Below, one piece after another: positions 1-25,276 of a stretch of 28,701 nt of DNA (positions are counted from its first letter, which is position 1; the number at the start of each line of letters is the position of its first letter). The DNA comes from Macrostomum lignano (Eukaryota), in NCBI GenBank assembly GCA_002269645.1, contig NIVC01005005.1:1-28701 (forward strand), given 5' to 3'. The notes below the pieces were generated by a model. The model had not been told where the DNA came from, ran no database searches, and worked only from the letters and a program-made list of their open reading frames with translations. The translations under genes were made by a program, and so were the position numbers.

Positions 1-1560
1 GCAGTCTAATCACTCAGTAAGCAGTCTAATCACTCATGAGCAGTCTAATCACTCAGTAAGCAGTCTAATCACTCAAGTGAGCAGTCTAATATCACTCAGT
101 GAGCAGTCTAATCACTCAGTAAGCAGTCTAATATCACTCAGTGAGCAGTCTAATATCACTCAGTGAGCAGTCTAATATCACTCAGTGAGCAGTCTAATAT
201 CACTCAGTGAGCAGTCTATATATCAATCAGCGAGCAGTCTAATATCACTCAGTGAGCAGTCTAATATCACTCAGTGAGCAGTCTAATCACTCAGTGAGCA
301 GTCTAATATCACTCAGTGAGAAGTCTAATGTCACTCATTATGAGCAGCTAATATCACTCAGTGAGCAGTCTAATATCACTCAGTGAGGCAGTCTAATATC
401 ACTCAGTGAGCAGTCTAATCACTCAGTAAGGCAGTCTAATATCACTCAGTGAGCAGTCTAATATCACTCAGTGAGCAGTCTAATATCACTCAGTGAGCAG
501 TCTAATATCAATCAGCGAGCAGTCTAATATCACTCAGTGAGCAGTCTAATATCACTCAGTGAGCAGTCTAATCACTCAGTGAGCAGTCTAATATCACTCA
601 GTGAGCAGTCTAATGTCACTCAATGAGCAGTCTAATATCACTCAGTGAGCAGTCTAATATCATTCAGTGAGCAGTCTAATATCACTCAATGAGCAGTCTA
701 ATCACTAAGTGAGCAGTCTAATCGCTCAGTGAGCAGTCTAATCACTCAGTGAGCAGTCTAATCACTCAGTGAGCAGTCTAATATCACTCAGTGAGCAGTC
801 TAATCACTCAGTGAGCAGTCTAATATCACTCAATGAGCAGTCTAATCACTAAGTGAGCAGTCTAATCACTCAGTGAGCAGTCTAATCACTCAGTGAGCAG
901 TCTAATCACTCAGTGAGCAGTCTAATCACTCAATGAGCAGTCTAATCACTAAGTGAGCAGTCTAATCACTCAGTGAGCAGTCTAATCACGCAGAGAGCAG
1001 TCTAATCACTTACTGAGCAGTCTAATCACTCAGGGAGCAGTCTAATCACTCAATGAGCAGTCTAATCACTCAGTGAGCAGTCTAATCACTCAGTGAGCAG
1101 TCTAATCACTCAGTGAGCAGTCTAATCACTAAGTGAGCAGTCTAATCACTCAGTGAGCAGTCTAATCACTAAGTGAGCAGTCTAATCACTCAGTGAGCAG
1201 TCTAATCACGCAGAGAGCAGTCTAATCACTCAGTGAGCAGTCTAATATCACTCAGTGAGCAGTCTAATCACTCAATGAGCAGTCTTATCACTCAGTAAGC
1301 AGTCTAATCACTCAATGAGCAGTCTAATCACTCAGTGAGCAGTCTAATCACTAATTGAGCAGTCTAATCACTCAGTGAGCAGTCTAATCACTAAGTGAGC
1401 AGTCTAATCACTAAGTGAGCAGTCTAATCATCAGTGAGCAGTCTAATCACGCAGAGAGCAGTCTAATCACTAAGTGAGCATTCTAATCACTCAGTGAGCA
1501 GTCTAATTACTCAGTGAGCAGTTTAAATACTCAGTGAGCAGTCTAATTACTCAGTGAGCA
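1..1560. repeat. Minisatellite array, unit GAGCAGTCTAAT(AT)CACTCAGT (20/22 bp), about 75 copies, truncated by the window start
   Basis: Directly visible head-to-tail repeats. The 22-bp variant dominates roughly the first 800 bp and the 20-bp variant thereafter; the array decays after about 1500. Confidence 0.98.
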
Positions 1561-2311: not shown

Positions 2312-3912
2312 TCAGTCTTCGTCTGACGAATGCTCCGATTCGAACTCCGGACTTCCATAGGACTCAGCAGCCGCCTCTTCGTCTTCATCATAGTAATAAT
2401 CCCCAACAGCCTCTCTAGTGTAAGATTCCCCAGCCGGTTCCTCCTGCGAATATCGTCGCCTGGCCATGGCGGCCGCGGCCTCGGCGCCGCCAACCCCGGT
2501 CTCGCTGGCGACCAGGTGGCCGACAATGGCGTCGCTAGCCGTCAGCAGCTCTCCGGCCGCGTCGGTCAGCATCTCGTCTAGCAGCTGCTCGGCGATGGCG
2601 TCAGTCAGCTGGGTTGGTCGGAAAGCGGCGCCTCCGGACGACGGATCAGCGGCGGCGGCGGTGGTCAGGAAGTCCCGATAACGATCACGCTGCGACCGGA
2701 TGCTCTGGACCTCCGCCGGGGTCAGCTGCAGCACCGCTGGCTGCCTGCTGCCGCCGAGTCCGCTGCTTTCGCCAAGTTCAGCGGCCGCAGCCGGCCGTCT
2801 GGAGCCGCCGGTTTTAACAAATCGCAGCGGATCTGGCGGCCCTGCCTGCCAGCGGCCGTCAACAGAGCATATCGGCTCGTCGCCGGCGGCCAGAGCGGCG
2901 GCCCAGCGATCGCGAATGTCGTCACCTTCGGTCTCCAGCTGGCTGAGCGATGGTCGATGTTGCACAGCTCTGCTAAGCTTCCAGCGATGCTACCGCGGAT
3001 CAGCGAGCCGGCCGAAGCCGACAGAGCCGGCGTGGCCGACGGGACGAAGCCGCCGCCGGCACGGCCGCCGCCGCCTCCTCTCAAGCCGAGCTCGCGCTTG
3101 ACCGCGGCCAGCACCTCGGCAACGATGCGGGACCGCTCCGAGTCGGAGCTGGCGGCGGCGGCGGCCACTTGGCCACTTGAAGTCGCCGGCTGGTCCGCGA
3201 CAACGGCGGCCGTACGCGCTGGAGCTGGAGCGGATGGCACAGCAGTAGTCGGTGGGCGATAACGCGACGATGGCTGGCGTTGCTGCTGTTGTTGTTGCGA
3301 CACAGCAGACGGAGCGACTCGGGCACTCCTGGGTCTTGTAGGAAACGGCAAGGCTCCTGGACGGCGCTTGGCGGCGCCACCAGTGGAGCCGCGTCCAAGC
3401 AGACGTTCGGCCTCCAGCTCGGCCATCCTAGTCGCATACTGTTGAACTTCCTCGCGTAGGCGGCGCAGCTCCAACGCTTCGTGGCGCTTCATTGAGGCGG
3501 CGTTCTCGCGCGGATGCCTTGAAGAGGCGGCGCCGGCGCCAGTGGGATTGGGGCGCCAGGCGCGATCAGTGTCGCGAACTGGAGGCGAATGACTTCTCGA
3601 TGGCAGCTGCTGTCTTTGCTGCCGCTGCTGCTGTTGCTGCTCGGCCGTTTTCCTAGAAACCACCGCCCGGCTCTGGCGCAGCCGCCGTTCAACATTTTTC
3701 GGGCCCGGCGGCAGGCCGGCGTCCAGCCTCTCGCGGCTGTGCTGCAGCTCTCGCCTGGCCAGCCGGCCCATCAGCTCCATTCGGCGCGGATCGATTCGTT
3801 TCTCAATGAGCAGCGGCTGCGGATTGGCCGGCAGCCGGGTGACCAGGTTGCTGGGGGACGCCCGATGGTCCAGGTTGAACTGCAGCTGGTTGACCGCCTG
3901 GCTTAAATCCAT
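2312..3912 (-). CDS. KIAA0753: KIAA0753/moonraker (OFIP/MNR)-like centriolar protein, interrupted by one apparent frameshift near 2947
   Basis: The N-terminus of ORF 3912..2722 (NQLQFN...SNL..R...P..LIEK...RLARRE) matches the recalled vertebrate KIAA0753 N-terminal motif (NQLQFN...SNLAIR...IRIEKL...HLARRD). ORF 2965..2312 (FRPTQLTDAIAEQLLDEMLTDAAGEL...IVGHLVASE) matches the recalled C-terminal motif ([26 protein letters not shown]...AEAVFTSE). Adding one base gives a continuous 533-aa frame. Confidence 0.8.
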
Positions 3913-5661
3913 GATGCTGGCGGCTGGAATTGTGAGTCATTACAATATAGTTAGAATATATTTATAAAATTTTCAGAAGGGCTGTGGGCACCCTGGTGCA
4001 ACACTGAGACAATTCTGCACATTCCACTGACTCCTGAGCACATACAAGCCCACGAATGCTGTACGCAGGCACGCACTCACACACACGCTCATTCAGGGTG
4101 TACAGCGGCCCTGGCATGTACACCTTGTTTTTTACTCGTATTTTAATTGTAAATCATGGCTGGCTGACATTTAGCGCCTACAACTAAAGTACCTCCTGCC
4201 GAGTTGCATCCATTGTATTGCCTAAGATGCACATCTTGACTAATGGCTGGCAGGCACTCAATGCATTTCCCATATCCCAACCATGTGTTTATCAATCACC
4301 ATCTGTATTTTATTGATCCAAACAACCCAATCATGCATGCAAACACAATTGAAGGTGCCTAGGTATATGTGAAGGCAAAGTTCTGCAGCCAGCATGGCAC
4401 TAGTGACAACCTCTTTGACTCCCATCTTAATGAGTTCCTCTAGCACCAACTCTACCTAGAGAAGTGCTTTGGCAACTCCCTATACTAAGTGACCTATTAC
4501 TATACTGTGCCTTTAAGACCTCCATAGCTTAGACTTGCACAGATCTTAAGTATGCCTTAGTAAACTCATTTTGGTTCATTTGTTTAAATTTGGTGTCAAA
4601 ATAATGTAATAGAAGAAACTAGGACATGGCCAAATAGTATATTGGTTGTAAGGCTATCATTTTATGCTAAATGTTAATAAATAAATTGCACTTATTTTTC
4701 ATAATTATACTTTGTTTAATGCAATTTGTTTACAAACAAAAATTTCCCCTATTGTTAATTCTCAATTGTCAATTCTATTGCACTCAATATGATTAGGAAT
4801 ATGGCATCAATGATACGTTTATCTATAATTATTTTAATATCTTTTTATTAAAAGGTATTTTGTAAATTTTTTATTTTGTTAATTCTATTCTGAATTTTTA
4901 AGTTCCAACTATTTCAATATTTTACCATAGACAGTGATTATTCCCATAGCCCCATGCCAAAAATGACAATATTATCTATATAAAATCATGCCAACAATAC
5001 TCTGCTTATTTGTATAGGCCTAGGCCTACTGTATTGCAGCTTAATTATAATAGGCCTACTTAATATTACCTTGGCCAAGGTGAAATTCATCCTAAAAATA
5101 ATTTTGTATAGAAAAAAAATTAAATGTATATATATGCAAAACTTTATTAATTTTTTCTTTAGCCCTAAGAGAGTTTAATAAATTAATATTAGTTTTAGTA
5201 TTTACTATTGCTATATTTAAATGGGTCATTCCACGAAAGAGACCTATTATGTTTTTGAACTTTAAGCACTTGTAACTTTTGAACCATAATTCAAAAGTCC
5301 TATTAGATAAAGCTGCAAAAAGCAATCTATGTCAAACTTCTAGTTCTATATTTTTCACATGGCTACTTATGAAGTCTAAAACAATTGAAAAAATAGCAGA
5401 GCATAAACTATGTTGATTGTTGATGGCTATTTGGTAACAAAAAAGGAGTCATGCATACCAACTCAACTGTGCATACCTAACTTTTGGTATACTAGGCAAA
5501 TGCATACCCAAATTTTTGGGTGTATTGTATACTACATGATCTAGAGTATAGCATAGATAATATTTTCATTATTAGCACGAGACCATGGGAATAAGCACTG
5601 CCTTCACTATATACTTTTAGTAGACATTGACTTGTCCTGACCTGAATTAAGTATGCTAAAA

Positions 5662-5702
5662 AAGAATAGTTATACCATAATGGCTATGGTATAACTATTC
5701 TT
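5662..5702. other. Perfect 18-bp inverted repeat with 5-nt loop, followed by a (TTATTC/TTC)n tract to about 5735
   Basis: AAGAATAGTTATACCATA (5662-5679), loop ATGGC, TATGGTATAACTATTCTT (5685-5702); the arms are exact reverse complements. Confidence 0.95.
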
Positions 5703-7336
5703 ATTCTTCTATTCTTATTCTTATTCTTCTTATTATATGGTATGGACCTATGGTTATACCATAAGAAATTAAATAAGTCATAAAATATAATAAAATGATC
5801 CTAAGCCTAAAGTTAAGCGCTTGACTAAAAATAGTAATACTATTAACCTTAACTAGCGTGGCGAGTTAAGAAAGCCCAAAATTCCTAATGAATTCAGAAT
5901 TGAAACAATGAAGCATGCATGTCAAATGGCTGGCTTGAACATCATTGACAATTTGTGCAGGCTAAGACTAGCAGCATAGTTTTTTAAATGGTCATAGACA
6001 AGGATGAAATAATTTAAGCAAATTTGTGCTTTTAGCTATTCTTTTTATAAGCCGTATGAATTTTGCTTTTTCCCTCGGTTTGGGTTTAGTCGTTAAGTTT
6101 ATATATTGGAAAATGTGTTTTTTGTGGAGGTAATTCATTTCTTAGAAAATCTGTTCAATTTACATTTCAAATTATCTGCATGTTTTACAGAAAACCAAAA
6201 GCTAAATACTTGCCTTTTTGTTATTGATAACAGAAAATAAAAGCGTTTATTTTTTAGTCTGTAACTTGATTTTAGTAGTTTGATTGATCTTTTGTCCCTA
6301 CGCTTAAAAAATTATTTGTTTCTCATTACGAGTAAACCTGCATACTTGTAGAACGAATTTGTCAAATGGAGATTCTTCCGCGACTAAGAAAGCATAAGTC
6401 ACACCAAATGCATTATCGAGTAAAGTACTCGGAGATAGATTATTCTGTTAGGAAAATTGATCATGTATAAGTGTAATACTTTTGGAAATGTGAATCGTGG
6501 CACAATACAGCACATCGATCATATAATTATGCATGTACATGTAATAAGTTCTAAGCTGTTAGCGTGCTTTCTGAAAAACCTACCCACTCGGGCAAATAAA
6601 TTTTGCGAAGCGTCTCTATTTAACTTTAAGATTTCGAAAACCAATTTTTGCTCTAGATGTACGAGCAATATGCTAGGATCGAACTACATGCAGCTGTGTG
6701 GGCGTAGACGCATTTGTGCCATACAGCATATCCACTGTAACAGCATGTGTACACCCTCTTCATTCAAAAAAGGTAATCTCTATATATATGCACTGCAACT
6801 GGTGAAAACTCGTAAACTACCCCATACAGAGGTAGATCACTAAAACAAAGTCAGCGGGCACATTTGAACAATATTTGACTTTTTCGGCACCGTTTTGTGC
6901 TATGCGAAAACCAAAAAATCAAAAACCAAAAAACCAAAACTCACTCCATCAAACACCCAAACAGGCCGGGCCGGACAGCACAAAATAGGAGACAATTTCT
7001 TAAAAATCCTTTAAAATCATTTGCACTCAAACAGTAAATAAATGAGAATGCGACGGATTTTGTCGGATATTCATTTTTAGATCGGAGAATATATAGTGCT
7101 GCTAGCTGTTTATTCATATTTATTAAAAGACGGCTTATGTTTTTCCCATCCAGTCTAAACTTTGATTTTCTGATTAAATCGACTCTGACTATCAAATATC
7201 TATGGTAGTTAGTTAGATCGATCTTAGCGTACACTTAACTTTTAGAACACTTTTTGTATCGAAGAATCCGCGAAATTTTTAATTAGCAGAAGCATCTTAA
7301 AAAGCAATTACAATTACCATTCTGCAATTATAGAGC

Positions 7337-9572
7337 ATGGATGGCCTGGATGAACAGGATTTGAAGCGAGCGGAGCTTGATTACTGCCTAAAAAATAGTC
7401 TGAACTTCGTAGACACACAGGCGCTTGCCGAAGCCAGGAAAGGTAACGGCGACGTCAGCGAAGCGGATAATGAAGAGGAAACACCGGATGAGTGGCTCGT
7501 GGACGTTCGCTATACAAGCCGGCTGCTCAAGAAGGCAAACGAAATGCGCATTAAAAAGCGCCTCTGCGACCTCACCATTGGCTTGAAAGACGGCAAGCTG
7601 GAGGCGCACAAAAGCATGCTGGCCGCCGGTTCACCTTTCTTCAAGCATTTGACGGAAACGACTCGCGCTTCTACGTTAAATTTCTTCCACGTGACCTGCA
7701 GCGTGGCGGACATCCTGTTCGACTTTATGTACACCGGTGAGGTCAGCATAGAGAAGGCGGAGAAGCTGGGCCGCTCGGAGCGACAAATGCTACGCGAGAA
7801 AGCCGAGCTGTTCGAAGTTGACCAGCAGCTTCAAGCGCTGTGGGATCGGCTTGGAGTCGCTACTAAGAATTCCGGCAAGCAGAGCCAGCAGGCAGAACGC
7901 CAAGAGGTGCCATTGGAGGATGCCAGTGAAATAGTAAAACGCAAGGTGAGTTAGCAAGTGCTACTCGTATTCTTCTAGCACGAAACAAGGCTTGGAGCTG
8001 CTCCGGTAAAGTACAAAGTATTGTACATACTCTGCCACTTCCCCGCAGGTTCTCTACATGAACGATCGTCGAAAACAGGGCGACTTCGCGGACTGGAAGA
8101 TCCGCATCAGCGCCGTAGACATTCCTGTCAGCAAGGTTTTCCTGGCCGCTAGCAGCACCTATTTCGCCGACTTCTTTGCCAGAAATCCCATGGAGGCCAA
8201 GTCTGAAACTTACACTTTGACGGAGCTTAATCGTCGAACTTTTCGAAAGGTGCTCAACTTTATTTATACTGGTCACGTGATCACCACGGGACGAGACCTG
8301 GCCGAACTCAAGGACCTCCTGTTTCAGGCTAGCTACCTGGGCGTAGGCGATCTATCTAGCCGACTTGTGGAGGAGTTCGAGTCGCGTCTTACCACCGAGA
8401 ACTGCTTCGCAATGTTCTCTTATTCGAACAGCATAAACTGCCGTCAGTTATTTAAATCGGTCTCGCACTTCATTGGTCGCATAGGTGCCAAGTGGTCTCA
8501 CAACTCTGGCTTCCTGGGTCTTGAATTCAATGATCTGCGCGCTGCGCTGCTGAACCCGGATCTGCGATTCGATGGCGACGACTCTGACTCTGATGAGGAA
8601 TGCAGCTGCCTTCCCTGGCCAGTCGACTTTGAGTCGCGCACGCTTGACTTGCTCATTGCTTGGATCCGCGTTGATCGCGTCCGACGATCAAGTCACGTGA
8701 CTGAACTGTTCGACCTGGTTGACCGGCTGGGCAGGCTACCGTACACCGGCCGGAGAGAAGAGATGCACCAACGGCTGCCAGCAGAACTGAACAATGTGAT
8801 GTCTGCGTACTACTTGAAGCTAATAAAAGAACAGCAAGGAAAAACTTGCCCAACCAAGCAACCATCGCCGCAGACCAAACAGTCGCCCATCCGAGCTCGT
8901 CGCTACCTGTTTCCCACCCAGCTGCTCATGTCCCGGGAGTTTCACCTAGCGGGTCCTCAGCTGCCGGGCTCTGCCCTGCTTCCGACAAAATTACAGTCCT
9001 CTCCGGATGAGGAAGAGCTCAGAGGCTGCTGGCAACTGTCGCCAACTGAATGGCGCTTGCAGTCGATTGAAATTCAAGCGTCCGATCAAGAGCTGACTTG
9101 GCTATCTGGCCTCAAACTGATCTATCAGCGGTACCCAATGCTCGCTAAGTCTGAAGATCCCCCAACCGAACTGCGCACCTTCTGCTGCGGTTACCGCGGC
9201 TCGTTCCAGCACAGTATCGAACTGGACGAGACGGAGAGAGTGGTTCAGCTTGGCCTTGGCAGCGCGACTGCTGGCAGCAGCGGCCGCAGAAGTTATATCA
9301 GCTGGTTGAAGACCTGCAAGGGTCGACGACTTCAAGTACCAGTGGCGGCGGCAGCGTCAGAGACGACGAGTGTCAGCAACAGCAACCAGAGCGCCGACGA
9401 GAACCCAACTACAGTTGTCAAATCACCGAAGAAAAGTCACGGCTTCTTGCACGGCTTTGGATTGCGCTTCAGCGAGGCTGGAGGCGGCGCCATGACCATT
9501 GTCTGGGCAGTCGAAACCGACGTTGACGGGCTGGGCGACTCTCCTTGGAGCTCTGTGGTCGAGAATGAATGA
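7337..9572 (+). CDS. Two-exon tandem BTB/POZ-BTB-BACK protein with C-terminal jacalin-like module, 710 aa (exons 7337-7945, 8049-9572)
   Basis: BTB1: LLKKANEMR..LCDLTI...AHKSMLAAGSPFF...DFMYTGEV. BTB2: MNDRRKQGDFADWKI...KVFLAASSTYF...VLNFIYTGHV. BACK: LTTENCF...CRQLF...FLGLEFNDL...LLIAWIRVD. The two ORFs are joined by a canonical phase-0 intron. Confidence 0.9.
7946..8048 (+). other. 103-nt GT-AG intron (phase 0) of the BTB gene
   Basis: Donor AAG|GTGAGT at 7946 and acceptor cttccccgcag|GTT at 8048; splicing removes the stop at 7952-7954 and puts GTT CTC TAC ATG in frame. Confidence 0.88.
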
Positions 9573-9952
9573 GTAGGCACTCATAACCACAACACTAGCT
9601 GTAGATCTACTAATTCTGGATTAGGACTGCTACAAAAGGTGAAGCAACGTCCAACTAATCGTAGAAATTGTACTAAGCTAAAAGCACTCCTCGTCCAAAT
9701 AATTTATAATATTTTTATAATTTTGTTTTTTTCAGCAAAACAATCCCATCGCTTTCTACTAACAGTAGCTAATATGTCTCGTAGAAATGAATATATGCTA
9801 CGCTCGTAGGCACAAAAATCTTTAAACTCTTGAACCACATCCAAAGCAGGCGTCGAAACAGTGAGCAACTTTTAAAAATAGAACACTGTGCTACCCTACT
9901 TGAGGGTCTTTGTTTTTTGCAATTATATTTTACTTCTGTCCTCGATCTAGTT

Positions 9953-10274
9953 CAGGGGTCGGCAAATGCGTTTCGCGAGTCACATGCGGCCCGCAAAGAC
10001 TCTCTATCCGGTCATCGGGTCCTTCGAAACTTCACAATAGCAATCTAGCCCGCTTAAGGTTTGTGTCTCTTCTCAGCTCACTTTCTCTTCTCTCCTCTCT
10101 CCTTTCTCTCCTCTCTCCTTTCTCTCCTCTCTCCTTTCTCTCCTCTCTCCCTTCTCCTCCTCCTCCCCTCATCTCTCATTTTCTATTCCCTCCTCCTTTT
10201 CTCTCTCATCTGGCCCGCAGCCATGAGCTTGATTCTTAATCTGGCCCTTGAGGTAAAAAAGTTGTCGACCCCTG
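9953..10274 (+). mobile_element. Non-autonomous hAT (Charlie/Buster-like) MITE with internal CT-rich tract
   Basis: TIRs CAGGGGTCGGCAAA and the reverse complement of GTTGTCGACCCCTG (12/14 match). 8-bp flanks ATCTAGTT (9945-9952) and CTCTAGTT (10275-10282) match 7/8 and resemble the Charlie NTCTAGAN target. Confidence 0.88.
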
Positions 10275-10685
10275 CTCTAGTTCCACCGGTGGTAAGCCCT
10301 CCGCAAATGAAGGTAACAATTATTAACACGGCAGAGATTCTGGGTGTACGCTTGAATGGCTCGCTATGTAGTAATATATCGAAAATTGGTATTTTAATTC
10401 CGTCTGCAGCTTTCACTGGTTAGAATGCTAAATAGCCCGTGTGGGTGGGCTCACCAGCTCATCATCCAGGCACTGAAGTATCAACTCGTGCAGTCAGGCA
10501 AACCGGAGTCTGGAATTCATGGAATTTAGGTTTTGAGACGAGAACTTTCGGGAGAAAAAATACCATCCATAAAAGATTCAGGGATCCTTATCTGCCTGCA
10601 GAAAAAAAATACATTAAAAGTACATTGAAAGCAAAGACATGCTGGGCTAATTGGAGCACAGAAAAAGCCCCTATATAGCAACTAA

Positions 10686-12322
10686 CTAAATAGCATCAAT
10701 CAATTTATGCTTGTGTGCGTTGCTCCCAGAGCCAGCTGCTGCGAAGGCTTGTAGGGCGATAGGAGTTACAAATTCATGAAGAGTCTGAGCCGCTGAGTCC
10801 GACGCCTTTAGCTGGCGTGCGAAACTTTGCTGTGACAGGAAACACACCAACCCCTGTGCTATGTGTGCCCACATAGAATATTTGCTAGCTAGAAAAAAAA
10901 GTCAAAAGGCAAATGGCTCGCACAACCACTTCTAGCGAATCAATCAAATCCTGTCATTCATTCTCGATGAGGCTGCAATACATGCAGGCGCAATTTAATG
11001 CACTGTAAGCCCCTGACTTGCATGGCGGAGAAAGAGATTACGCTTTAGAGTTCTCCGAAGTGCCTTGCTTAGAATGTAACATTTACTGGGTGTGTTGTAA
11101 CAGTACGCGCTAGAATTACGAAATTGGGAATGTAGCTACCCTATATATAACAATCCTCTTCTCAACTGCACCCGAGAAGAGGGCTTGCAGCCAAACAGCC
11201 AAACATTATTCAACGGATGTTCAATCAAGAAATGGTTGAATATCTCTACGATGGTGAATGATCTTGACATGAAACTGTGAGGATGCGTCGTTTCGTACAG
11301 GCGTTATGCCAGTCGAGCAGTCGGCGAAGTCGAAGGGGTGGGGTGAAAGTATTGATAATATTCGCAAGAGGACTGTGGCCCCCTGGCCCAACGCTGGCAA
11401 TTCTGCCCATTCTGCCCGTTTACCGCTGAGCTGCCCTGCCTCATGAAGTCCGGCGGAAGAAATTCCACAAATTTCCATCCACTATGGTTTCATTTTAAAG
11501 CAGAAAAACAGCTTGGAATTGCTACAGCTAAAGCTGCATGGATTCTGTTCAATAATGGTACTCAACTATAGACTGTGTGTCACCTGCACACTGGTGTCAC
11601 AGTGTTACAATGGATGCTTTTGCAGTTTACAGAGAGCACAATTTTATGATTTTATGACAGAGCGACGACGGAGCTATGAATATTAAAATACATGCCATAG
11701 CCCTGTACAGTAGGATGCAGACACGGAGCCAACACAAGACAGCCAGCCATTACGTCAATTGCCTCGCGTGCACTTTTAGCTTGTATCACTGAAGCGGCGC
11801 GCAATTTTGCTGATTTGCTTTGTTTTGAAAAGGTTTTTTTACAAAATATACCTGTGTACAGTTTTGTTCTGGATTGAATGATATACCATTCTCAGTATAG
11901 ATTTCTATCTACTGTTTTGACCCTCTCCTCTGTCTACCCCGTCCATCACTCATGTTTAAAGTGTCTTCCCAAGTAGAAAAGTGCAAATCAGCAGCGAATA
12001 TTCTCGCACAGGGCACAGCTTGTAGATAGGGAGAAACTTCCAGCCGATCGCGAAGTTTTACAGCGCAACGACCGTGTGCGGTGATCCAGGAAAGTCAATA
12101 AACAGTTGTGCATCAGGGCCGGACCAGCTTACATTCGGAAGAGAGGGTTGGTAACTTTGGAAGAGAATATGCAGTGCAGGAAAAGATGCACTAAAATTTA
12201 TACATAGTCGAATGTACATACCATGCCGTGTTTGGTGCACGAATTAGTTTATAGTGCACAGTGAACGCATTGGTGCTGTTTTGGTTGCATTAGCTAGTTG
12301 GAATATAAAATAGCGATCCGAT
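10686..12322 (-). CDS. Candidate spliced 3-prime gene portion (exons 12322 or 12275->12222, 12154->12133, 11481->11299, 10829->10686); product unrecognised
   Basis: GT-AG boundaries with matching phases (2, 0, 0) give ...TNAFTVHYKLIRAPNTA-CYQPSLPN-WMEICG...STGITP-QSFARQLKASDSAAQ...LIDAI*. Strong sites are ATG|GTATGT, ctcttccaaag|, AAT|GTAAGC and gtgtttcctgtcacag|; the donor at 11298 (GTACGA) is weaker. No homology recognised. Confidence 0.35.
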
Positions 12323-14189: not shown

Positions 14190-14301
<112 letters not shown>

Positions 14302-16208: not shown

Positions 16209-16625
16209 CAGGAGCCGTCGTCAAACTTATTAATCTAAAGGACAAGATAGAGAATCTTGTCGTGACTGCGGACCAGAGGAGGGGAAGAGGAGAGGGTCAA
16301 AGAGAATAGAGAAGAAATAAAAGAGATAGGAGAAGGGAGAGAAGCGAGAAGCGAGAAGCAAGAAGCGAGAAGAGAGAAGAGAGAAGAGAGAGGAGAAAAG
16401 AGGAGAGGAGAGGAGACGAGGAGAGAATGGAGAGGAGAGGGGACCGGAGATGGGAGAAAAAGAGGAGAGAAAATAGAAAAAATAAATGAGCTGAGAAATT
16501 GGAGATTGGAGATTTAACTCTCAAGATAAGAGAGTTGAGAAGCGACACAAACCTTGAGCGGGCCAGAATCGCTATTGTGAAGTTTCAAAGAACCCGAGGG
16601 CCGGATAGAGAGGCTTTGCGGACCG
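16209..16625 (-). mobile_element. Second, more diverged and one-end-truncated copy of the hAT MITE at 9953-10274, in inverted orientation
   Basis: The reverse complement of about 16535-16625 aligns closely with 9987-10080 (…ccgcaaag.ctctctatccgg…gaaacttcacaatagc…cccgct.aaggtttgtgtc). The purine tract at 16280-16490 mirrors the CT tract. CAGGAGCCGTCGTCAAAC at 16209 is a degenerate TIR; the other TIR is absent. Confidence 0.85.
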
Positions 16626-18329: not shown

Positions 18330-20882
18330 TCATACGTAGCCACTCGGCATCAAGCGATAGTCACAGTTAGTTCTCATGGCCTCGGATTTCGCCCGCCAGA
18401 GCCGCTGCTGCGAGCCGCCAGCGGAGGAAATCGTCTCAGGCGTGGCCGCCCCGCTCCAGCCGTAGGAGGCCGATGACGATAGGAAGAGCAGGTCCCGATG
18501 GCTTCTCGCCTCGTGACCGCCTCCGCCACCGTAGCCGCCTGTTGAAGGCGAAGACGACGCGGTAGTTTCGCTGCGGCTGTCTGCGGCAGCTCGGCTTAAC
18601 CGCCTGCTGAGCGTGTGCCGCTCCTGGATCTGCTTTTGCAGGCCGACCGTCTCCTCGCTGGTAGTGAGGTAATAGAGAAAGCGCTTCACGTCTCTGAGTC
18701 GCGGCCCTGCCACCTCTACCCGGCGCAGACCATCCGGCAGGTCTTCCGCCTCTTCTGGCGGGAGCAGACGCAGAGTGCAGCTGTGCCGGCTGGCCAGAGA
18801 TGCTACCACCGGGTCTAGCAGGAACGCCTCGCTCTGAGCCAGGCTGCCGCCCGCCCGGATGTGGAAGAAGTAAAACGCTCGCTGACCCGCGGCGCGTCGC
18901 TCCACCGGGAGAGGACTCTTGGGCGCCGGGCCGTCGCGCGGCTGACCGCGCACAGCTGAGAAGGTTCGGCAACGGCGGCGCATCTCAGCTGCGTGACGGA
19001 CATCCGCGATGCGTCGAGGCTGTGCCGGTGGCTGGCCAACAAAGTCCGGCTCCTGTTGTCGATACTGTTGAATGGGCCGGTCCTCGCCGTTAAGCTTTCC
19101 GGGACAAGAGTCGCGTCGAACACGGGGCCTGCGCTGGTGCTCGAAGACCCCAGCGTCGTAGTAGTCGTTGTCTCTTTCGGTATCGATGCACTCGTCGTCA
19201 TCGTCGCAGAACATGTGCAGCCGCTCAAGGCCTTCAACTAGTGAGCGACGCTGAGCAAAGTAGCGCGGCCGGTAGAGCACAGTTGGTTGGCTATCAAACA
19301 CGCGATGACCGCGGCCAGACGCATTTACCGCTGTCTGCGTCAGCGCCGGAAGAAGGCGCATCCGGGGAACGTCTCGCCTACGCTGGCTGCGGCTGCGACT
19401 ACGCCGAAGCGTAATGCGGAGCTGCGGAGGCGACGGCGATTCTCTGCCGGTATTTGTCCCTACTGTTGACGATGCTTTCGTTGTGGCTGCCGCTGTCTGG
19501 CAGGCGTCATCTCGAGAACTTGGTGGCTGGGGACGTCGTTCAGCTTGAGCCCGAACTGTGCTTCTAGTTTTGGTTCGGCCTCTGGATTGTTCTGTGTTTG
19601 TTCGCATTGAGTTGGACGCATCTGCTTCCCGCTCGGATTTTACTGCCTGCGACTGTTGCCGTTGGTCACGCTGTTGTGGCTGCTGCTGTTTTTGTTGTTG
19701 TTGTTGTTGTTGCTGTTGCTGTTGTTGCTGTTGTTGCTGTTGTTGTTGCTGTTGTTGTTGCTGTTGTTGTTGCTGTTCTTGTTGTTGTTGTTGTTGTTGT
19801 TGTTGCTGCTGCTGTCGTTGTTGTTGCTGCTGCTGCTGTTGCAGCTGATTTTGCATTTGCCTTTGTAGCAACTGTTGCTGCTCAAGCATCTTCTGTTGTA
19901 GCAGTTTCTGTTGCTGCTGTTGAAAGATTTGAAGCTGATGTTGATGCAAGAGGCGCTGCTGTTGAAGCAGCTGCTGCTGATGAGGCGCTTGCTTCAGCTG
20001 CTCTTGGTGCTGTAGCAACTGACAATTTGATTGTCGAAATGATCTCTGTGTGTTTAACGTCGATTGCCGCTGCTGTTCTGGCTGAGAATTGCACTCCGGC
20101 AGTGGCGGGGCGCCCCTCCGACCGCGAATTACAGTCTCACTACCCCGCGGCCCAGCTGCAGCTCTGAGAGTGCGGTCATCCGCTGCTTTCTGCTCTATGA
20201 TTGTGTCAACCTCCAAGTCCATAGCTGACGAATCGTCCTCCTCTTCCGCTTTAGGCATGACCCGATCGATGCTGCTAGGAAATTGTTGGTGGGCAATTTG
20301 CCGCAGCAGGCGCTGCTGTTGCTGCTGTTGCTGTTGGCTGAGCTGTCGCCTCGGACTCAGCCCATAGTTACCGTGGACTGGACACGGCCGACTATGAGCT
20401 GCAGCTGCCGAAGACTGACTTCGCTTAGGGGGCTGATTTCGACCGGCGCTGGCACTGTCGGACCGCTGCTCAGCTGGCTGAGTACGACCGTCATTGTCGG
20501 AATACTCTGGTGGTGGAGGCAGCATCGGTGGCGGAGGCAGCGGGCGCATTGGTGGCTGAAGGATTGACAGGTCTTCCGTCTGCCGCTTGGCCTGGCCATT
20601 TTCAATACAGACAGCGGGAGCAGCAGGCGCATCGGCTCTAGCAGCACCACCTTGGCCACCGTTGACTCCTTGAGCATCCTGTCGACTCTGATGATGATGC
20701 CGCGGTTTGTACAGCGGAGACTCGCAGCCGCCATTGTCAACTATGTAGTCCGTGATGACGAAGTTGTAATTCGGCGTCGGCTTCTGGTCGGCTGGCGACA
20801 CGCCGACTCCGCCGCTGCCGTTGCCAGCGGATCTCTGCTGCTGGCCGGGCCGTTTGCTCAGTCGAGACTGGCGTGCTCCCAT
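18330..20882 (-). CDS. 850-aa low-complexity, glutamine-rich protein of unknown family; N-terminal MG, possible degenerate KH-like module near the C-terminus
   Basis: 2553-nt open frame with the same GC-rich, Q/A/S/P/R-biased style as the other genes in the window. ATG at 20882 is preceded by acceptor-like cttccgccttcag. The 3-prime end may splice at TAC|GTATGA (18335). Confidence 0.8.
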   Translation of the reverse strand: MGARQSRLSKRPGQQQRSAGNGSGGVGVSPADQKPTPNYNFVITDYIVDNGGCESPLYKPRHHHQSRQDAQGVNGGQGGAARADAPAAPAVCIENGQAKRQTEDLSILQPPMRPLPPPPMLPPPPEYSDNDGRTQPAEQRSDSASAGRNQPPKRSQSSAAAAHSRPCPVHGNYGLSPRRQLSQQQQQQQQRLLRQIAHQQFPSSIDRVMPKAEEEDDSSAMDLEVDTIIEQKAADDRTLRAAAGPRGSETVIRGRRGAPPLPECNSQPEQQRQSTLNTQRSFRQSNCQLLQHQEQLKQAPHQQQLLQQQRLLHQHQLQIFQQQQQKLLQQKMLEQQQLLQRQMQNQLQQQQQQQQRQQQQQQQQQQQQEQQQQQQQQQQQQQQQQQQQQQQQQQQQQKQQQPQQRDQRQQSQAVKSEREADASNSMRTNTEQSRGRTKTRSTVRAQAERRPQPPSSRDDACQTAAATTKASSTVGTNTGRESPSPPQLRITLRRSRSRSQRRRDVPRMRLLPALTQTAVNASGRGHRVFDSQPTVLYRPRYFAQRRSLVEGLERLHMFCDDDDECIDTERDNDYYDAGVFEHQRRPRVRRDSCPGKLNGEDRPIQQYRQQEPDFVGQPPAQPRRIADVRHAAEMRRRCRTFSAVRGQPRDGPAPKSPLPVERRAAGQRAFYFFHIRAGGSLAQSEAFLLDPVVASLASRHSCTLRLLPPEEAEDLPDGLRRVEVAGPRLRDVKRFLYYLTTSEETVGLQKQIQERHTLSRRLSRAAADSRSETTASSSPSTGGYGGGGGHEARSHRDLLFLSSSASYGWSGAATPETISSAGGSQQRLWRAKSEAMRTNCDYRLMPSGYV
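19660..19850 (-). repeat. Coding (CAA/CAG)n polyglutamine tract; longest pure run 28 Gln (19775->19692)
   Basis: TTG/CTG triplets on the plus strand, interrupted by single K, E and R codons. Confidence 0.97.
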
Positions 20883-22325
20883 TCAGTCTGGCTGGCTGAA
20901 GGCGGAAGTCCGGCTGAGCGACAGAATTCAGTCGGCCATGGCCCGCGCCACAGATGAAAAATTCCTCAGCAACTTCTTGCTCTTTCTCTCTGTCTGCCTC
21001 CACAGTTTTCCACCCAAGTGTGGCAGGCCGGCCCGGTTGTCAAGCGAAGCGAGAACAAGGGATTTGGGGGGATCTTCACGCTGTAATTCACTTTATTCCT
21101 TTGCCACCTTGGATTTTCTACCCTCTAGCCTTGTAGATTGGTGCTGTCGGGTAAGAAAACACGCGCCAGTATCAGGAGAGAGAGGAGGAGAGCAGCCGTG
21201 GAGAGCAATAAGTCGCTTGGTAGGAGGTTGCGCAGGTCAGGAGGCGTTCGCTCTTTTCTCGCCGGAAGACAAGACGGGGGCTGTACGGCCAGTGGTTGGC
21301 AGCAGTACTTTTGTCTACGGAGGGGAGTTGGGAACTTCGGTTCCAATTTTAGAGAACTGCGAGCAAGAGAGAGGAGGGCGACGAATAAGGCAACGACCAA
21401 AATGGGAATTCTGTGTGGTTCTTTCTCGCTAAGCTGCTATGGAAAGCCAAGTGCTTGGGAGAGAGAAGGAGAGAGAACGCATGCGCGCATTAATACACTG
21501 GCCAGGCCAGAAAGTCGCCTGCCCCAGCCTTAGCTGCGCCACCATTGGCTGCTGCGGCAAGTAGGACTGGAAGCATGCGTGCAGCATTAGCAATGGGCCT
21601 TCCGATTCGCCCAATGCCTTCAAAGCCCATCGTGGCTGCCTCATTTTCTCTTCTCCGCAACTGTAGGAAAATCCGTTCTACTGGCTGTGACGGGGTTGGG
21701 GCCTACCAGCCTTAGCTGTCAAAAGTTCTGAACTGTGGAGGAAGGGTTCTTTGGCCAAGGGCGGTTCCCACCGCGGTTGCATGACCTGTCCACCTGTCCA
21801 CCAATGGAAGTTCCAAGTGCGTGCTTCTTTTTAGTCCAATTTTCATAACTTCTCATCAACTGCGGGTTTCTTTAGGCCCAAAGATTGGAGCTTCTGGGTA
21901 AGGGGAATAGTTTTGGAAATGGGAAGGGAGACGAAAGAGAACGTGGGATTATAGATTTAGCTAGCCATGTGGACTTGCAGCGGGATGCAGCGGAGCTATA
22001 ACTGGGCGTAGCCGCAAGGACAACAATTGTCATTGTCCTTAAAATGCACCCAAATCTGCCGTTTTTCAGCCCGCTTTCTTGGAAATACTTCTAGAAGCGA
22101 ATATCCTGCGGAATTTCACATGCAATTATAGTTTTCATGCGTGTTTTTCTCGTACGTATTTTAAGCCTTCAACACAAACAAGGATAAATGGCCACTCCAC
22201 AGGTGTCGCCTTGGACTAGGGGGGGGGGGGCAGAGGGGCAAAGGGGGGATAGTGGGGACAGATCCAAGAATCATAAAGGAAAACTTCGTATATCATTTTG
22301 GGAATCAGTGTTTTTAGTAAGTATT

Positions 22326-23148
22326 CTTGGCGCCACAGTCACTCATTTTGGCGCCACAGTCACTCATTTTAGCGCAGCAGTCACTCATTATAGCGCAGCA
22401 GTCACTCATTTTAGCGCCACAGTCACTCATTTTAGCGCCGCAGTCACTCATTTTAGCGCCACAGTCACTCATTTTAGCGCAGCAGTCACTCATTTTAGCG
22501 CAGCAGTCACTCATTTTAGCGCAGCAGTCACTCATTATAGCGCAGCAGTCACTCATTTTAGCGCCGCAGTCACTCATTTTAGCGCAGCAGTCACTCATTA
22601 TAGCGCAGCAGTCACTCATTATAGCGCAGCAGTCACTCATTATAGCGCAGCAGTCACTCATTTTAGCGCCGCAGTCACTCATTTTAGCGCCGCAGTCACT
22701 CATTTTAGCGCCGCAGTCACTCATTTTAGCGCAGCAGTCACTCATTATAGCGCAGCAGTCACTCATTATAGCGCAGCAGTCACTCATTTTAGCGCAGCAG
22801 TCACTCATTTTAGCGCCACAGTCACTCATTTTAGCGCAGCAGTCACTCATTTTAGCGCCGCAGTCACTCATTTAAGCGCAGCAGTCACTCATTATAGCGC
22901 AGCAGTCACTCATTTTAGCGCAGCAGTCACTCATTTTAGCGCCACAGTCACTCATTTTATTAGCACCGCAGGCACTCATTTTAGCGCAGCAGTCACTCAT
23001 TATAGCGCAGCAGTCACTCATTTTAGCGCCGCAGTCACTCATTTTAGCGCAGCAGTCACTCATTTTAGCGCCGCAGTCACTCATTTTAGCGCCGCAGTCA
23101 CTCATTTTAGCGCAGCAGTCACTCATTTTAGCGCTGCAGGCACTCATT
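22326..23148. repeat. 21-bp minisatellite AGCGCAGCAGTCACTCATTTT, about 39 copies
   Basis: Directly visible; variants CGCAGCAG/CGCCGCAG/CGCCACAG and TTTT/TTAT. It accounts for ORFs 22188..23153, 22327..22875 and 22314..22871. Confidence 0.98.
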
Positions 23149-24796
23149 CTTGATTTCCATGACGGGTCACAAGGTGTGGGGGCTGGAGGACAAAGCCCCC
23201 ATGTCCCCCTACAGCTTTTACAGGCCTGTACACAGTCTATACACAGTATTATCCAAAGTTCTAGCTAAATTGCTAGCTAACTGACTACCCATCTGCAGTC
23301 GGAAGTGAATAATGTTAAGCATAGCTAATTGCGCAATTTGAATAAAAACTCATTACGCAATGGTTGGCGATGAGATCAATGCCCCTGAAAGATACCCAAC
23401 TTGAAAGGCTATCCAGGTCTGAAATGCAATTTCTCCTCAGACAGAATGTTTTTCTCAACGACTTTCTGCTAAGCTAATATTCGGGACAGGAGGCATGGGG
23501 CCACACCAATCTTGGTGCACACTACTGGCACTCCCTCATCAGTACACTATTTACTTAATCCCGATTTGCATAGCTTCTGGATCTTACTCGGCCACTTTAC
23601 TGATGCTTGCTCAGCTCACTGAGCCAGATTTTTCCATCTAGATTATTCCTTCTCGCTTGGTAGAATTTTTCCCATTAATATTTATCCCTGACCCGATTTC
23701 CCTTAATTTCGATGCGGGTAAGCTCATAGGTTCTTGGTCACGAGCTCGAGTTTCCGGACCTCCCGGTATGTAAAACTTCTCGAAATCTCATGCTTAGCTT
23801 GCAAGAGCGTTTCATCCGCGAACATAGCGGTGAGGCTCCGCACCCAGATGGCTTGGAAGTGTAAAGTAGCCTAGCAGCAACCCGTCTCTGTTGTCTCGCG
23901 TCGAATTAACGCGGGTTTAATAGTGCACGATCAGCACACATACAGAGTTAGCCAGTACAATACCCTGTGCGTGTACATGTATCCATGTGCTTGTGCGTGC
24001 TCAGGGATCAGCAAAATGTTGATTTACGGCAGTATCCAAAGCTCTCTGTGAAATAACTATAGCAACTAAGGCTTCTGATTACTGGCTTTTATGTATAGTC
24101 CAATTTTTAAGGCACTTTAGTCTGGACACTGCAAAGGACCTTGGCTTCATTGTTTCATTTCCTGTTTCTTCTTGATTCAACTTTTCTACTGTATTAGGCA
24201 AAACATACAAAAGCAATACATCATCAGGCTGCACACATGCAGCAATGGTTTATTTCCTTACAGAGAAAAAACAGGAAAGCCACGTTTTAACAACCGAATA
24301 ATGACTGATAGACTGGCTGACTACTGACCGATCGCTGGGACATTTTGAGTGACTGACTACTGCTGTAGTCGCTTTATCGATCTAACATCAAGGACAACTA
24401 AAGCAACGTATATACTTTAGTAGTCCTTGTCTAACATGAGTGTCTGATTGTCCTACATTGTTAACATTTAAGTCAACAATTTTATTGACTTCCGAGTCTA
24501 AAACTTTTTTTGTTGGGGCGTTTCTCAAGCTAGAAACTTCCCAAGTTTGATATTGTACATCGTCGAAAAGTCTTGCTAGTCAACTTTGTCAGTTTACAAG
24601 CCAAACTACATACACGATTTCGCGATGATGTAAATTTTCGAGCTTGTGTCCTAATTTGCGGTCCTAAAAACGAATGCCACATCAAATGCAAGCCCAACGC
24701 TAACAAGAAGATGAAGCAGATGACCTCCATGGCCTTCACATTTAGAAGCAATTACAAAACGCTGGGGTTGATGTTTTGTTTGACAACAAAACGATG

Positions 24797-25276
24797 TATG
24801 GAGGTTTCTGTAACTTTACGGAGGCCCTGTAGCTCTATGGAGGTCCTTGTAACTCTACAGAGGTTACTGCACGTATCTATACGAAGGTCCCTGTATCTAT
24901 ACGGAGGTCCCTGTATCGATACGGAGGTCCCTGTATCTATACGGAGGTCCCTGTATCGATACGGAGGTCCCTGTATCGATACGAAGGTCCCTGTATCTAT
25001 ACGGAGGTCCCTGTATCAATACGGAGGTCCCTGTATCTATACGGAGGTCCCTGTATCTATACGGAGGTCCCTGTATCGATACGGAGGTCCCTGTATCTAT
25101 ACGAAGGTCCCTGTATCTATACGGAGGTTCCTGTATCTATACGGAGGTCCCAGTATCTATACGGAGGTCCCTGTATCCATACGGAGGCCCTGTAACTCTA
25201 CAGAGGTCACTGTATCTATACGGAGGCCCTGTAACTCTACAGAGGTCCCTATAACTCTACAGAGGTCCCTATAACT
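24797..25276. repeat. 20-bp minisatellite ATACGGAGGTCCCTGTATCT, about 24 copies with diverged edge units
   Basis: Directly visible; homogeneous core at about 24880-25180. Confidence 0.97.

What the first reader, a model, noticed from the sequence alone, without database searches (positions are those of the whole stretch)
7337..9572. Tandem BTB-BTB-BACK protein ending in a jacalin-like lectin module instead of kelch repeats
Seen: two ORFs fuse through a canonical intron into a 710-aa protein with two BTB domains and a BACK domain. The region at about 9030-9515 reads LQSIEIQ...LSGLKLIYQ...CGYRG..QHSIELDETERVVQLGLGS...YISWLKTCKGRRLQV...GFLHGFGLRF. Established: jacalin/beta-prism-I repeats follow the pattern I..I.i...i..l.f.Y...hG...i.L...E.i..v.g...l.f.T..Gr...G...l.GF.G, and BTB-BACK proteins are usually Cullin-3 adaptors with kelch or PHR substrate domains. 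Inference: a Cul3 E3 adaptor with a lectin-like substrate receptor. A cytosolic, glycan- or pathogen-sensing ubiquitin ligase adaptor of this kind is an architecture I do not recognise from characterised animal proteins.
Basis: partly seen in the sequence, partly recalled or inferred. Interest (0 to 1): 0.72.

Follow-up and report, generated by a model that had tools for sequence, protein, structure and literature searches.

The report
Tandem-BTB flatworm protein, orphan tail
This is a real, transcript-backed gene of the flatworm Macrostomum lignano for a BTB-BTB-BACK protein, but its last ~190 residues resemble neither jacalin lectins nor anything else known, so the idea of a glycan-sensing ubiquitin-ligase adaptor has no support.

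Summary
The gene model is correct. Exon 1 (7337-7945), a 103-nt GT..AG intron and exon 2 (8049-9572) give a 710-aa protein identical to Macrostomum lignano PAA46190.1. The window is the whole contig NIVC01005005.1, whose gene models come from RNA-seq. Pfam and PDB searches confirm BTB1 (residues 68-163), BTB2 (207-312) and a 3-box/BACK (from 322). BTB2-BACK is most similar to the Cul3 adaptors KBTBD2 and KLHL3.

The jacalin reading failed every sequence test I could run:
- Pfam PF01419 gave no hit at E<=10.
- A jacalin profile that scores held-out algal, plant and animal members at 31-96 bits scores the tail at -0.7 bits, and 10.5% of shuffled tails do as well.
- hhalign gave probability 0.3%.
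- The conserved sugar-binding GxxxD loop is absent, and there is no internal repeat.
- A PHR profile, an unrelated beta fold, matches by eye just as well and is equally non-significant.

An exhaustive phmmer search of 1.84 billion representatives found no homologue of the tail. AlphaFold2 without an alignment gave pLDDT 33, so the fold remains untested.

Verdict: an ordinary lineage-restricted member of the BTB-BACK superfamily, probably a Cul3 adaptor or oligomeric scaffold, with an orphan C-terminal region. Low interest.

The parts
7337..7945 (+). Exon 1 (codons 1-203): acidic N-terminus, BTB1, helical linker
   Evidence: ORF. The spliced translation is identical to annotated PAA46190.1.
7538..7825 (+). 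BTB domain 1 (residues 68-163), ZBTB-like
   Evidence: PF00651 E 1.3e-14, profile positions 2-97 of 110. The best PDB matches for this part are Kaiso, PLZF, Miz-1 and NAC1.
7946..8048 (+). Intron, 103 nt, GT..AG, phase 0, with an in-frame TAG at 7952-7954
   Evidence: Sequence. Between gene copies it has 2/97 substitutions plus a 6-nt indel, against 8/2133 substitutions and no indel in the exons.
8049..9572 (+). Exon 2 (codons 204-710 plus stop)
8058..8375 (+). BTB domain 2 (residues 207-312), KLHL/KBTBD-like. It carries P250-M251-E252 where Cul3 adaptors have phi-x-E.
   Evidence: PF00651 best stretch 207-312, profile positions 1-105 of 110. Alignment to KBTBD2. Motif definition from PMC3616122.
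8403..8834 (+). 3-box plus BACK helical domain (residues 322 to about 465), with an acidic insert DGDDSDSDEE at 378-387
   Evidence: PF07707 covers 322-376 plus a second stretch, E 1e-6. The KBTBD2 alignment runs to residue 415. The end at about 465 is inferred from composition.
8835..9011 (+). Pro/Gln/Ser/Lys-rich linker (residues 466-524), probably disordered
   Evidence: Composition and TOP-IDP profile. No family match.
9012..9569 (+). Orphan C-terminal region (residues 525-710). It has three hydrophobic, Trp-rich islands (about 540-565, 580-630 and 667-700).
   Evidence: No homologue among 1.84 billion representatives. No PDB match at E<=10. Null against jacalin and PHR profiles. AF2 pLDDT 33. 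0/726 nt differences among four gene copies over 8847-9572.
9339..9437 (+). Ser/Thr/Ala/Asn-rich low-complexity insert (residues 634-666) inside the orphan region
   Evidence: Sequence. Entropy and TOP-IDP profile.

Best explanation
The locus encodes a Macrostomum-restricted member of the BTB-BACK superfamily. The order of parts is an acidic N-terminus, a ZBTB-like BTB1, a helical linker, a KLHL/KBTBD-like BTB2 with 3-box/BACK, a Pro/Gln-rich linker, and a roughly 186-residue orphan tail. The most likely mechanism is inferred, not shown. BTB2 plus 3-box/BACK docks the N-terminal domain of Cullin-3 as KLHL3 and KBTBD2 do. The two BTB domains give dimerisation or higher-order self-association. 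The tail is the partner- or substrate-binding end. Nothing indicates that the tail binds sugars or has a jacalin/beta-prism fold. Its fold and ligand are unknown.
For: The gene model is identical to a transcript-derived annotation. There are two BTB domains and a BACK domain above Pfam thresholds. BTB2-BACK aligns to KBTBD2 (E 1.9e-12, residues 214-415) and KLHL3 (4hxi, the KLHL3-Cul3 complex). E252 aligns with the Glu of phi-x-E. The tail is certainly coding: 242 codons are open where base composition predicts about 5.4% stop codons per codon, giving P about 1e-6 by my calculation. The tail has 0/726 nt differences among four assembled copies while the flanks differ by 1.4-2.2%. The tail has 6 Trp and ordered-like hydrophobic islands. 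It has no homologue anywhere. Jacalin tests were negative while positive controls scored 31-96 bits.
Against: Cul3 binding is untested. The phi position of phi-x-E is Pro250 rather than a large hydrophobic residue, with Met shifted by one. No orthologue or close relative of the whole protein was found, so conservation of the Cul3 surface cannot be judged. AF2 gave no usable model even for the BTB domains. The complete identity of the tail among copies includes synonymous sites, so it may reflect recent duplication or gene conversion rather than selection on the protein.
Confidence: 0.6

Rival explanations
1. Residues about 525-700 form a diverged jacalin-like (beta-prism I) lectin domain, which makes the protein a glycan-sensing Cul3 adaptor.
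For: The segments LQSIEIQ, LSGLKLIYQ, HSIELDETERVVQLG, YISWLKTCKGRR and GFLHGFGLRF occur in the same order as jacalin strands. The best local HMM and hhalign alignment does pair HSIELDETERVVQL with the jacalin 'f.L..gE.i..v' strand pair. The fold could not be tested.
Against: Pfam PF01419 is not listed at E<=10. The jacalin HMM scores the tail at -0.7 bits and 10.5% of shuffles do as well. hhalign gives probability 0.33% and P 0.18 over 14 columns. Held-out griffithsin, BanLec, heltuba, jacalin, artocarpin and ZG16 score 31-96 bits with the same method. The G-x-x-x-D loop, present in all 16 reference sequences, is replaced by GGGAMTIVW with no Asp. There is no Gly-rich N-terminal loop and no internal repeat (p 0.9). 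The match needs a 33-residue low-complexity insertion. A PHR profile gives an equally plausible eyeball match.
Confidence: 0.04
2. The protein is a non-degradative BTB-BACK scaffold. The two BTB domains and BACK drive oligomerisation or condensate formation. The largely flexible tail recruits partners through short hydrophobic, Trp-containing motifs, as described for C. elegans PEI-1 and proposed for BTBD7-type BTB-BACK-IDR proteins.
For: BTB-BACK proteins with disordered C-terminal regions that act as granule scaffolds exist (bioRxiv 10.1101/2020.12.10.417311). The tail is interrupted by low-complexity and Pro-rich stretches. It has no homologues, which is typical of fast-evolving disordered regions. 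The phi residue of phi-x-E is not canonical.
Against: The islands at 540-565, 580-630 and 667-700 have order-like composition similar to the BTB/BACK segments, plus 6 Trp and 4 Cys. BTB2-3-box-BACK is closest to genuine Cul3 adaptors.
Confidence: 0.25
3. The tail is a degenerate PHR domain, as in the BTB-BACK-PHR adaptors BTBD1/2/3/6.
For: The best hhalign alignment pairs GYRGSFQHSIELDETERVVQLGLG with the PHR motif [23 protein letters not shown] of BTBD2. BTB-BACK-PHR is a known architecture (bioRxiv 10.1101/575910).
Against: hmmsearch against the PHR profile gives -1.1 bits, and 17% of shuffles do as well. hhalign gives P 0.48. Pfam PHR is not listed. The middle and C-terminal PHR motifs (NNGT, GQIP) are absent. 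The PHR profile rests on only three PDB sequences.
Confidence: 0.03

Closest known systems
BTB-BACK-Kelch Cul3 substrate adaptors (KBTBD2, KLHL3, gigaxonin)
   Same: BTB2 plus 3-box/BACK aligns over about 200 residues. The Glu of the phi-x-E Cul3 contact is retained.
   Different: There are no kelch repeats. An extra N-terminal BTB is present. The phi position is Pro. Similarity is low (about 50 bits).
Tandem-BTB proteins: RhoBTB1-3, LZTR1, BTBD7
   Same: Two BTB domains sit in one chain with a BACK-type helical region. RhoBTB and LZTR1 assemble Cul3 ligases (abstracts listed). The BTB-BTB-BACK order of BTBD7 is from my own knowledge.
   Different: There is no Rho GTPase domain and no kelch propeller. 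No sequence relationship beyond the domains was detectable. The protein is much shorter than BTBD7.
BTB-BACK-PHR adaptors (BTBD1/2/3/6)
   Same: BTB-BACK followed by a C-terminal region of about 150-190 residues with strand-like patterns.
   Different: The PHR profile test is null, and there is only a single BTB in those proteins.
BTB-BACK-IDR scaffolds (C. elegans PEI-1, human BTBD7/BTBD18/GMCL1 group)
   Same: A structured BTB-BACK head and a lineage-specific, low-complexity-containing tail.
   Different: The tail here is short and has order-like, Trp-rich islands. No functional data exist.
Jacalin-related lectins (ZG16, griffithsin, BanLec, jacalin; Pfam PF01419)
   Same: Only a loose succession of alternating hydrophobic segments.
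   Different: There is no profile match, no GxxxD loop, no Gly-rich loops and no repeat.
Sugar-recognising ubiquitin-ligase receptors (F-box proteins FBXO2/Fbs1, FBXO6, FBXO27; own knowledge)
   Different: Those are SCF (Cul1) receptors with an FBA domain. Nothing links the flatworm tail to them.

Membership tests
Jacalin-like lectin domain (PF01419, beta-prism I) | Significant match to the family profile | tested here: not met
   PF01419 is not listed at E<=10 for the whole protein or for three tail fragments. My own HMM scores -0.7 bits with shuffle p=0.105. hhalign gives probability 0.33%. Held-out true members score 31-96 bits.
Jacalin-like lectin domain (PF01419, beta-prism I) | Carbohydrate-binding G-x-x-x-D loop before the last strand, and Gly-rich loops | tested here: not met
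   All 16 reference sequences have G..[LI]D (alignment). The corresponding tail segment SEAGGGAMTIVWAV has no Asp, and no GG loop is present near residue 525.
Jacalin-like lectin domain (PF01419, beta-prism I) | Three-fold beta-prism fold (three four-stranded Greek keys) | tested here: inconclusive
   AF2 without an alignment gave mean pLDDT 33.2 for residues 505-710 and 32.9 for the full length. The models are unusable, so no Foldseek search was run. No internal sequence repeat was found.
BTB-BACK Cul3 substrate adaptors | BTB domain followed directly by 3-box/BACK | tested here: met
   PF00651 covers 207-312 and PF07707 starts at 322. Alignment to KBTBD2 residues 28-226 and to KLHL3.
BTB-BACK Cul3 substrate adaptors | phi-x-E motif in the alpha3-beta4 region that inserts into Cul3 (M83-S84-E85 in KLHL3, PMC3616122) | tested here: inconclusive
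   The tail protein has P250-M251-E252 opposite L-S-E of KBTBD2. The Glu is kept but the phi position is Pro. The motif definition was read.
BTB-BACK Cul3 substrate adaptors | Physical binding to Cullin-3 | not testable with these tools
   Needs co-IP, ITC or yeast two-hybrid with M. lignano Cul3.
BTB-BACK Cul3 substrate adaptors | Recognised C-terminal substrate domain (kelch, PHR, MATH, discoidin) | tested here: not met
   No Pfam family other than BTB/BACK reaches threshold. The PHR profile is null. There are no repeats.
BTB-BACK-PHR (BTBD1/2/3/6) | Match to the PHR domain profile | tested here: not met
   hmmsearch gives -1.1 bits with shuffle p=0.17, and hhalign gives P=0.48. The profile was built from 3no8, 3gbw and 3hwj.
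BTB-BACK-IDR scaffolds (PEI-1-like) | Long intrinsically disordered C-terminal region | tested here: inconclusive
   The composition profile shows alternating order-like and disorder-like stretches. AF2 is uninformative.

The most novel reading that the evidence does not exclude
Residues 525-710 are a cooperatively folded, Macrostomum-restricted substrate-recognition domain on a tandem-BTB Cul3 adaptor. The fold would be either new or diverged beyond sequence recognition. Within this reading, I put the specific jacalin/lectin version at only about 0.04.
Probability: 0.2. Interest if true: 0.4.

Novelty: new member of a known kind. Interest (0 to 1): 0.14.

Why it matters
If the lectin reading had held, this would have been the first BTB/Cul3 adaptor with a carbohydrate-binding receptor, a Cul3 counterpart of the sugar-recognising F-box proteins. 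On the evidence it is instead one of many lineage-specific BTB-BACK proteins with an uncharacterised tail. Its practical value is small. It is a clean, transcript-supported, two-exon gene in a transgenesis- and RNAi-amenable flatworm, and could be used to ask what taxon-restricted BTB adaptor tails do. The case also shows that an eyeballed strand pattern matched two unrelated beta folds equally well and neither better than shuffled sequence.

Tried and rejected
1. The search for homologous proteins with the full protein returned only the protein itself. With the tail it returned nothing, not even the self-hit. I treat as uninformative and rely on the exhaustive phmmer search.
2. The only non-self hit (P0004, 1328 aa, 8 stretches) is a helical repeat protein whose score is summed over repeats matching ELRTFCCGYR-like words. 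I rejected it as spurious.
3. The weak Pfam hit EACC1 (E 0.011-0.066, 13.6-16.1 bits against a cut-off of 23.6) lies over the low-complexity stretch at about 600-653. I rejected it.
4. AF2 without an alignment, for the tail and for the full length, gave pLDDT of about 33, and even the BTB domains were not folded. I therefore ran no Foldseek search, because its matches would be meaningless.
5. I considered an AF2 run with a jacalin-seeded alignment and rejected it as circular.
6. Comparing the paralogues for selection gave little. The copies are 99.7-100% identical in protein, and the tail has no nucleotide differences at all, so dN/dS is undefined.
7. The PHR hypothesis was tested and is null.
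8. A literature search for this gene and for a BTB+jacalin architecture found nothing relevant.
9. Rfam and tRNA scans of the window found nothing.

Full report
**What is there**

The window is the complete 28,701-bp contig NIVC01005005.1 of the Macrostomum lignano Mlig_3_7 assembly (GCA_002269645.1). The gene sits at exactly 7337-9572 (locus L004). ORF 7337-7954 and ORF 8058-9572 are joined by a 103-nt intron at 7946-8048 with GTGAGT at the donor and a pyrimidine tract plus CAG at the acceptor, in phase 0.

The spliced product is 710 aa. It is identical, residue for residue, to P0002 = PAA46190.1/PAA47129.1/PAA76675.1 (BOX15_Mlig019819g3/g4). P0001 (g1) differs by R188H and I348M.

Gene models of this assembly were built from RNA-seq (StringTie/TACO, TBONE, TransDecoder; PMC5730564). 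The fusion of the two ORFs into one transcript is therefore supported by the annotation and not only by the splice signals. An unspliced intron would end translation at TAG 7952-7954.

Between gene copies the intron carries 2/97 substitutions and a 6-nt indel. The exons carry 8/2133 substitutions and no indel, and the 5' flank differs by about 2.2%. This is as expected for an intron.

**Domain architecture**

Pfam and PDB searches give the following:
- BTB twice (PF00651, E 4.4e-33): BTB1 at residues 68-163 (E 1.3e-14) and BTB2 at 207-312.
- BACK (PF07707) from residue 322, at E 1e-6 and 29.2 bits, above the 20.9-bit cut-off.
- BTB1 is closest to ZBTB-type BTB domains such as Kaiso, PLZF, Miz-1 and NAC1.
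- BTB2 plus 3-box/BACK aligns to KBTBD2 (residues 214-415 against 28-226, E 1.9e-12), to KLHL3 in its Cul3 complex (4hxi), and to gigaxonin.

In the Cul3-contacting phi-x-E motif (M83-S84-E85 in KLHL3; PMC3616122) the flatworm protein has P250-M251-E252 opposite L-S-E of KBTBD2. The glutamate is kept but the large hydrophobic position is not canonical. The observation 'BTB-BTB-BACK' is therefore correct.

**The tail**

After BACK comes a Pro/Gln/Ser/Lys-rich linker (residues 466-524), and then residues 525-710. This last region has three hydrophobic, Trp-rich islands (about 540-565, 580-630 and 667-700; 6 Trp and 4 Cys in total). A Ser/Thr/Ala/Asn low-complexity insert at 634-666 interrupts it.

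The tail is certainly coding. There are 242 open codons where the base composition predicts about 5.4% stops per codon, giving P about 1e-6 by my calculation.

The tail has no detectable relatives:
- An exhaustive phmmer search of 1.84 billion representatives found only the protein itself and one spurious repeat protein.
- phmmer against all PDB sequences found nothing at E<=10.
- Pfam gives only a sub-threshold EACC1 hit over the low-complexity stretch.

**Testing the jacalin claim**

Pfam PF01419 is not reported, but HMMER's filters hide weak matches, so I built a direct test.
- griffithsin (2gty)
- BanLec (2bmy)
- heltuba (1c3k)
- jacalin (1jac)
- artocarpin (1vbo)

Human ZG16 was verified the same way (7o3i). 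I added ten tetrapod ZG16 sequences, aligned everything and ran hmmsearch --max.

Results:
- The tail scores -0.7 bits, and 10.5% of 3000 residue shuffles do as well.
- hhalign gives probability 0.33% and P 0.18 over 14 columns.
- The same procedure scores held-out members at 31 bits (griffithsin) to 96 bits (BanLec). ZG16 scores 62 bits against a profile with no animal sequences. The method therefore does recognise cross-kingdom jacalins.
- The G-x-x-x-D sugar-binding loop, present in all 16 reference sequences, is absent. The corresponding tail segment is SEAGGGAMTIVW.
- There is no internal repeat (p 0.9).

As a control on pattern-matching by eye, I noticed that the same stretch (GYRGSFQHSIELDETERVVQLGLGS) looks just as much like the PHR motif of BTBD2 ([27 protein letters not shown]). 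A PHR profile built from 3no8, 3gbw and 3hwj is equally null: -1.1 bits, shuffle p 0.17, hhalign P 0.48. Two unrelated beta folds fit equally well by eye and neither beats chance.

**Structure**

AlphaFold2 could only be run without an alignment, because no homologues exist to build one. Mean pLDDT was 33.2 for residues 505-710 and 32.9 for the full protein. In the full-length run even the confirmed BTB domains were not folded. The low confidence therefore says nothing about order or disorder, and a Foldseek search would have been meaningless. The fold of the tail remains untested. This is the main gap.

**Copies in the genome**

Four assembled copies exist: L001 on NIVC01002331.1, plus L002, L003 and L004. 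L002 and L004 are identical. L003 has 1.4% divergent 5' flanks but an identical gene body, intron included. L001 differs by 8 exon substitutions (6 synonymous, 2 not), all of them upstream of the tail. The tail has 0/726 differences in every pair.

This fits the known redundancy and recent genome duplication of this line (PMC5730564), not a diversifying paralogue expansion. The data are too shallow to measure selection.

**Interpretation**

The best-supported reading is a lineage-restricted BTB-BACK superfamily member. BTB2-3-box-BACK most likely docks Cul3. The two BTB domains provide dimerisation or higher-order assembly. The orphan tail is the partner-binding end. All three steps are inferred from homology and none is shown here.

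The main rival is a non-degradative oligomeric scaffold with a partly flexible tail, as described for PEI-1 and BTBD7-type proteins. I give the jacalin-lectin reading about 4% and a degenerate PHR about 3%.

Tandem BTB proteins are already known: RhoBTB and LZTR1, and BTBD7 (own knowledge). Sugar-sensing E3 receptors also exist already in the SCF system (FBXO2 and relatives, own knowledge).

**Verdict**

The gene and the BTB-BTB-BACK architecture are real. The lectin module is not supported. This is a new member of a known kind, of low interest.

Noticed in passing
window 1-1560; 22336-23148; 24800-25270: Three satellite arrays with 20-21-bp units: 75 copies at the contig start, 38.6 copies and 23.5 copies. 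The second and third create long spurious ORFs (22188-23153 and 24573-25274). The first of these ORFs gives many meaningless sub-threshold Pfam hits.
   Followed up: partly
window 18330-20882 (-): A single-exon 850-aa ORF, annotated as a gene in the paralogous contig. It has no Pfam domain, long poly-Gln tracts (the (TGT)n array at 19672-19841) and an N-terminal MGARQS that looks like a myristoylation start.
   Followed up: partly
window 2722-3912 (-): A 396-aa ORF rich in Ala/Arg/Gln/Pro, with no Pfam match. It may be a low-complexity protein or may not be a gene.
   Followed up: no
L003 versus window 4837-12072: The copy on NIVC01000803.1 has a gene body (both exons and the intron, 2236 nt) identical to the window, while its 5' flank differs by 1.4% and its 3' flank by about 0.9% with large indels. 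This may reflect gene conversion between homeologous copies, or simply a local low-divergence patch.
   Followed up: partly
window 14194-14298; 10084-10177; 16301-16444: A perfect (TC)52 microsatellite and two purine/pyrimidine-rich simple repeats (TCTCCTC and AGAGAAG types) lie in the intergenic space downstream of the gene.
   Followed up: no
window 8847-9569 (tool behaviour): The word-indexed homologue search with the tail as query returned no hit at all, not even the parent protein that the full-length query had found. That negative result should not be counted as evidence.
   Followed up: yes
window 7330-7336: The start codon is preceded directly by ...TTCTGCAATTATAGAGC. This is a pyrimidine-rich stretch ending in AG, 2-4 nt upstream of the ATG, and could be a spliced-leader trans-splice acceptor. 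About 39% of M. lignano genes are trans-spliced. I did not test it.
   Followed up: no
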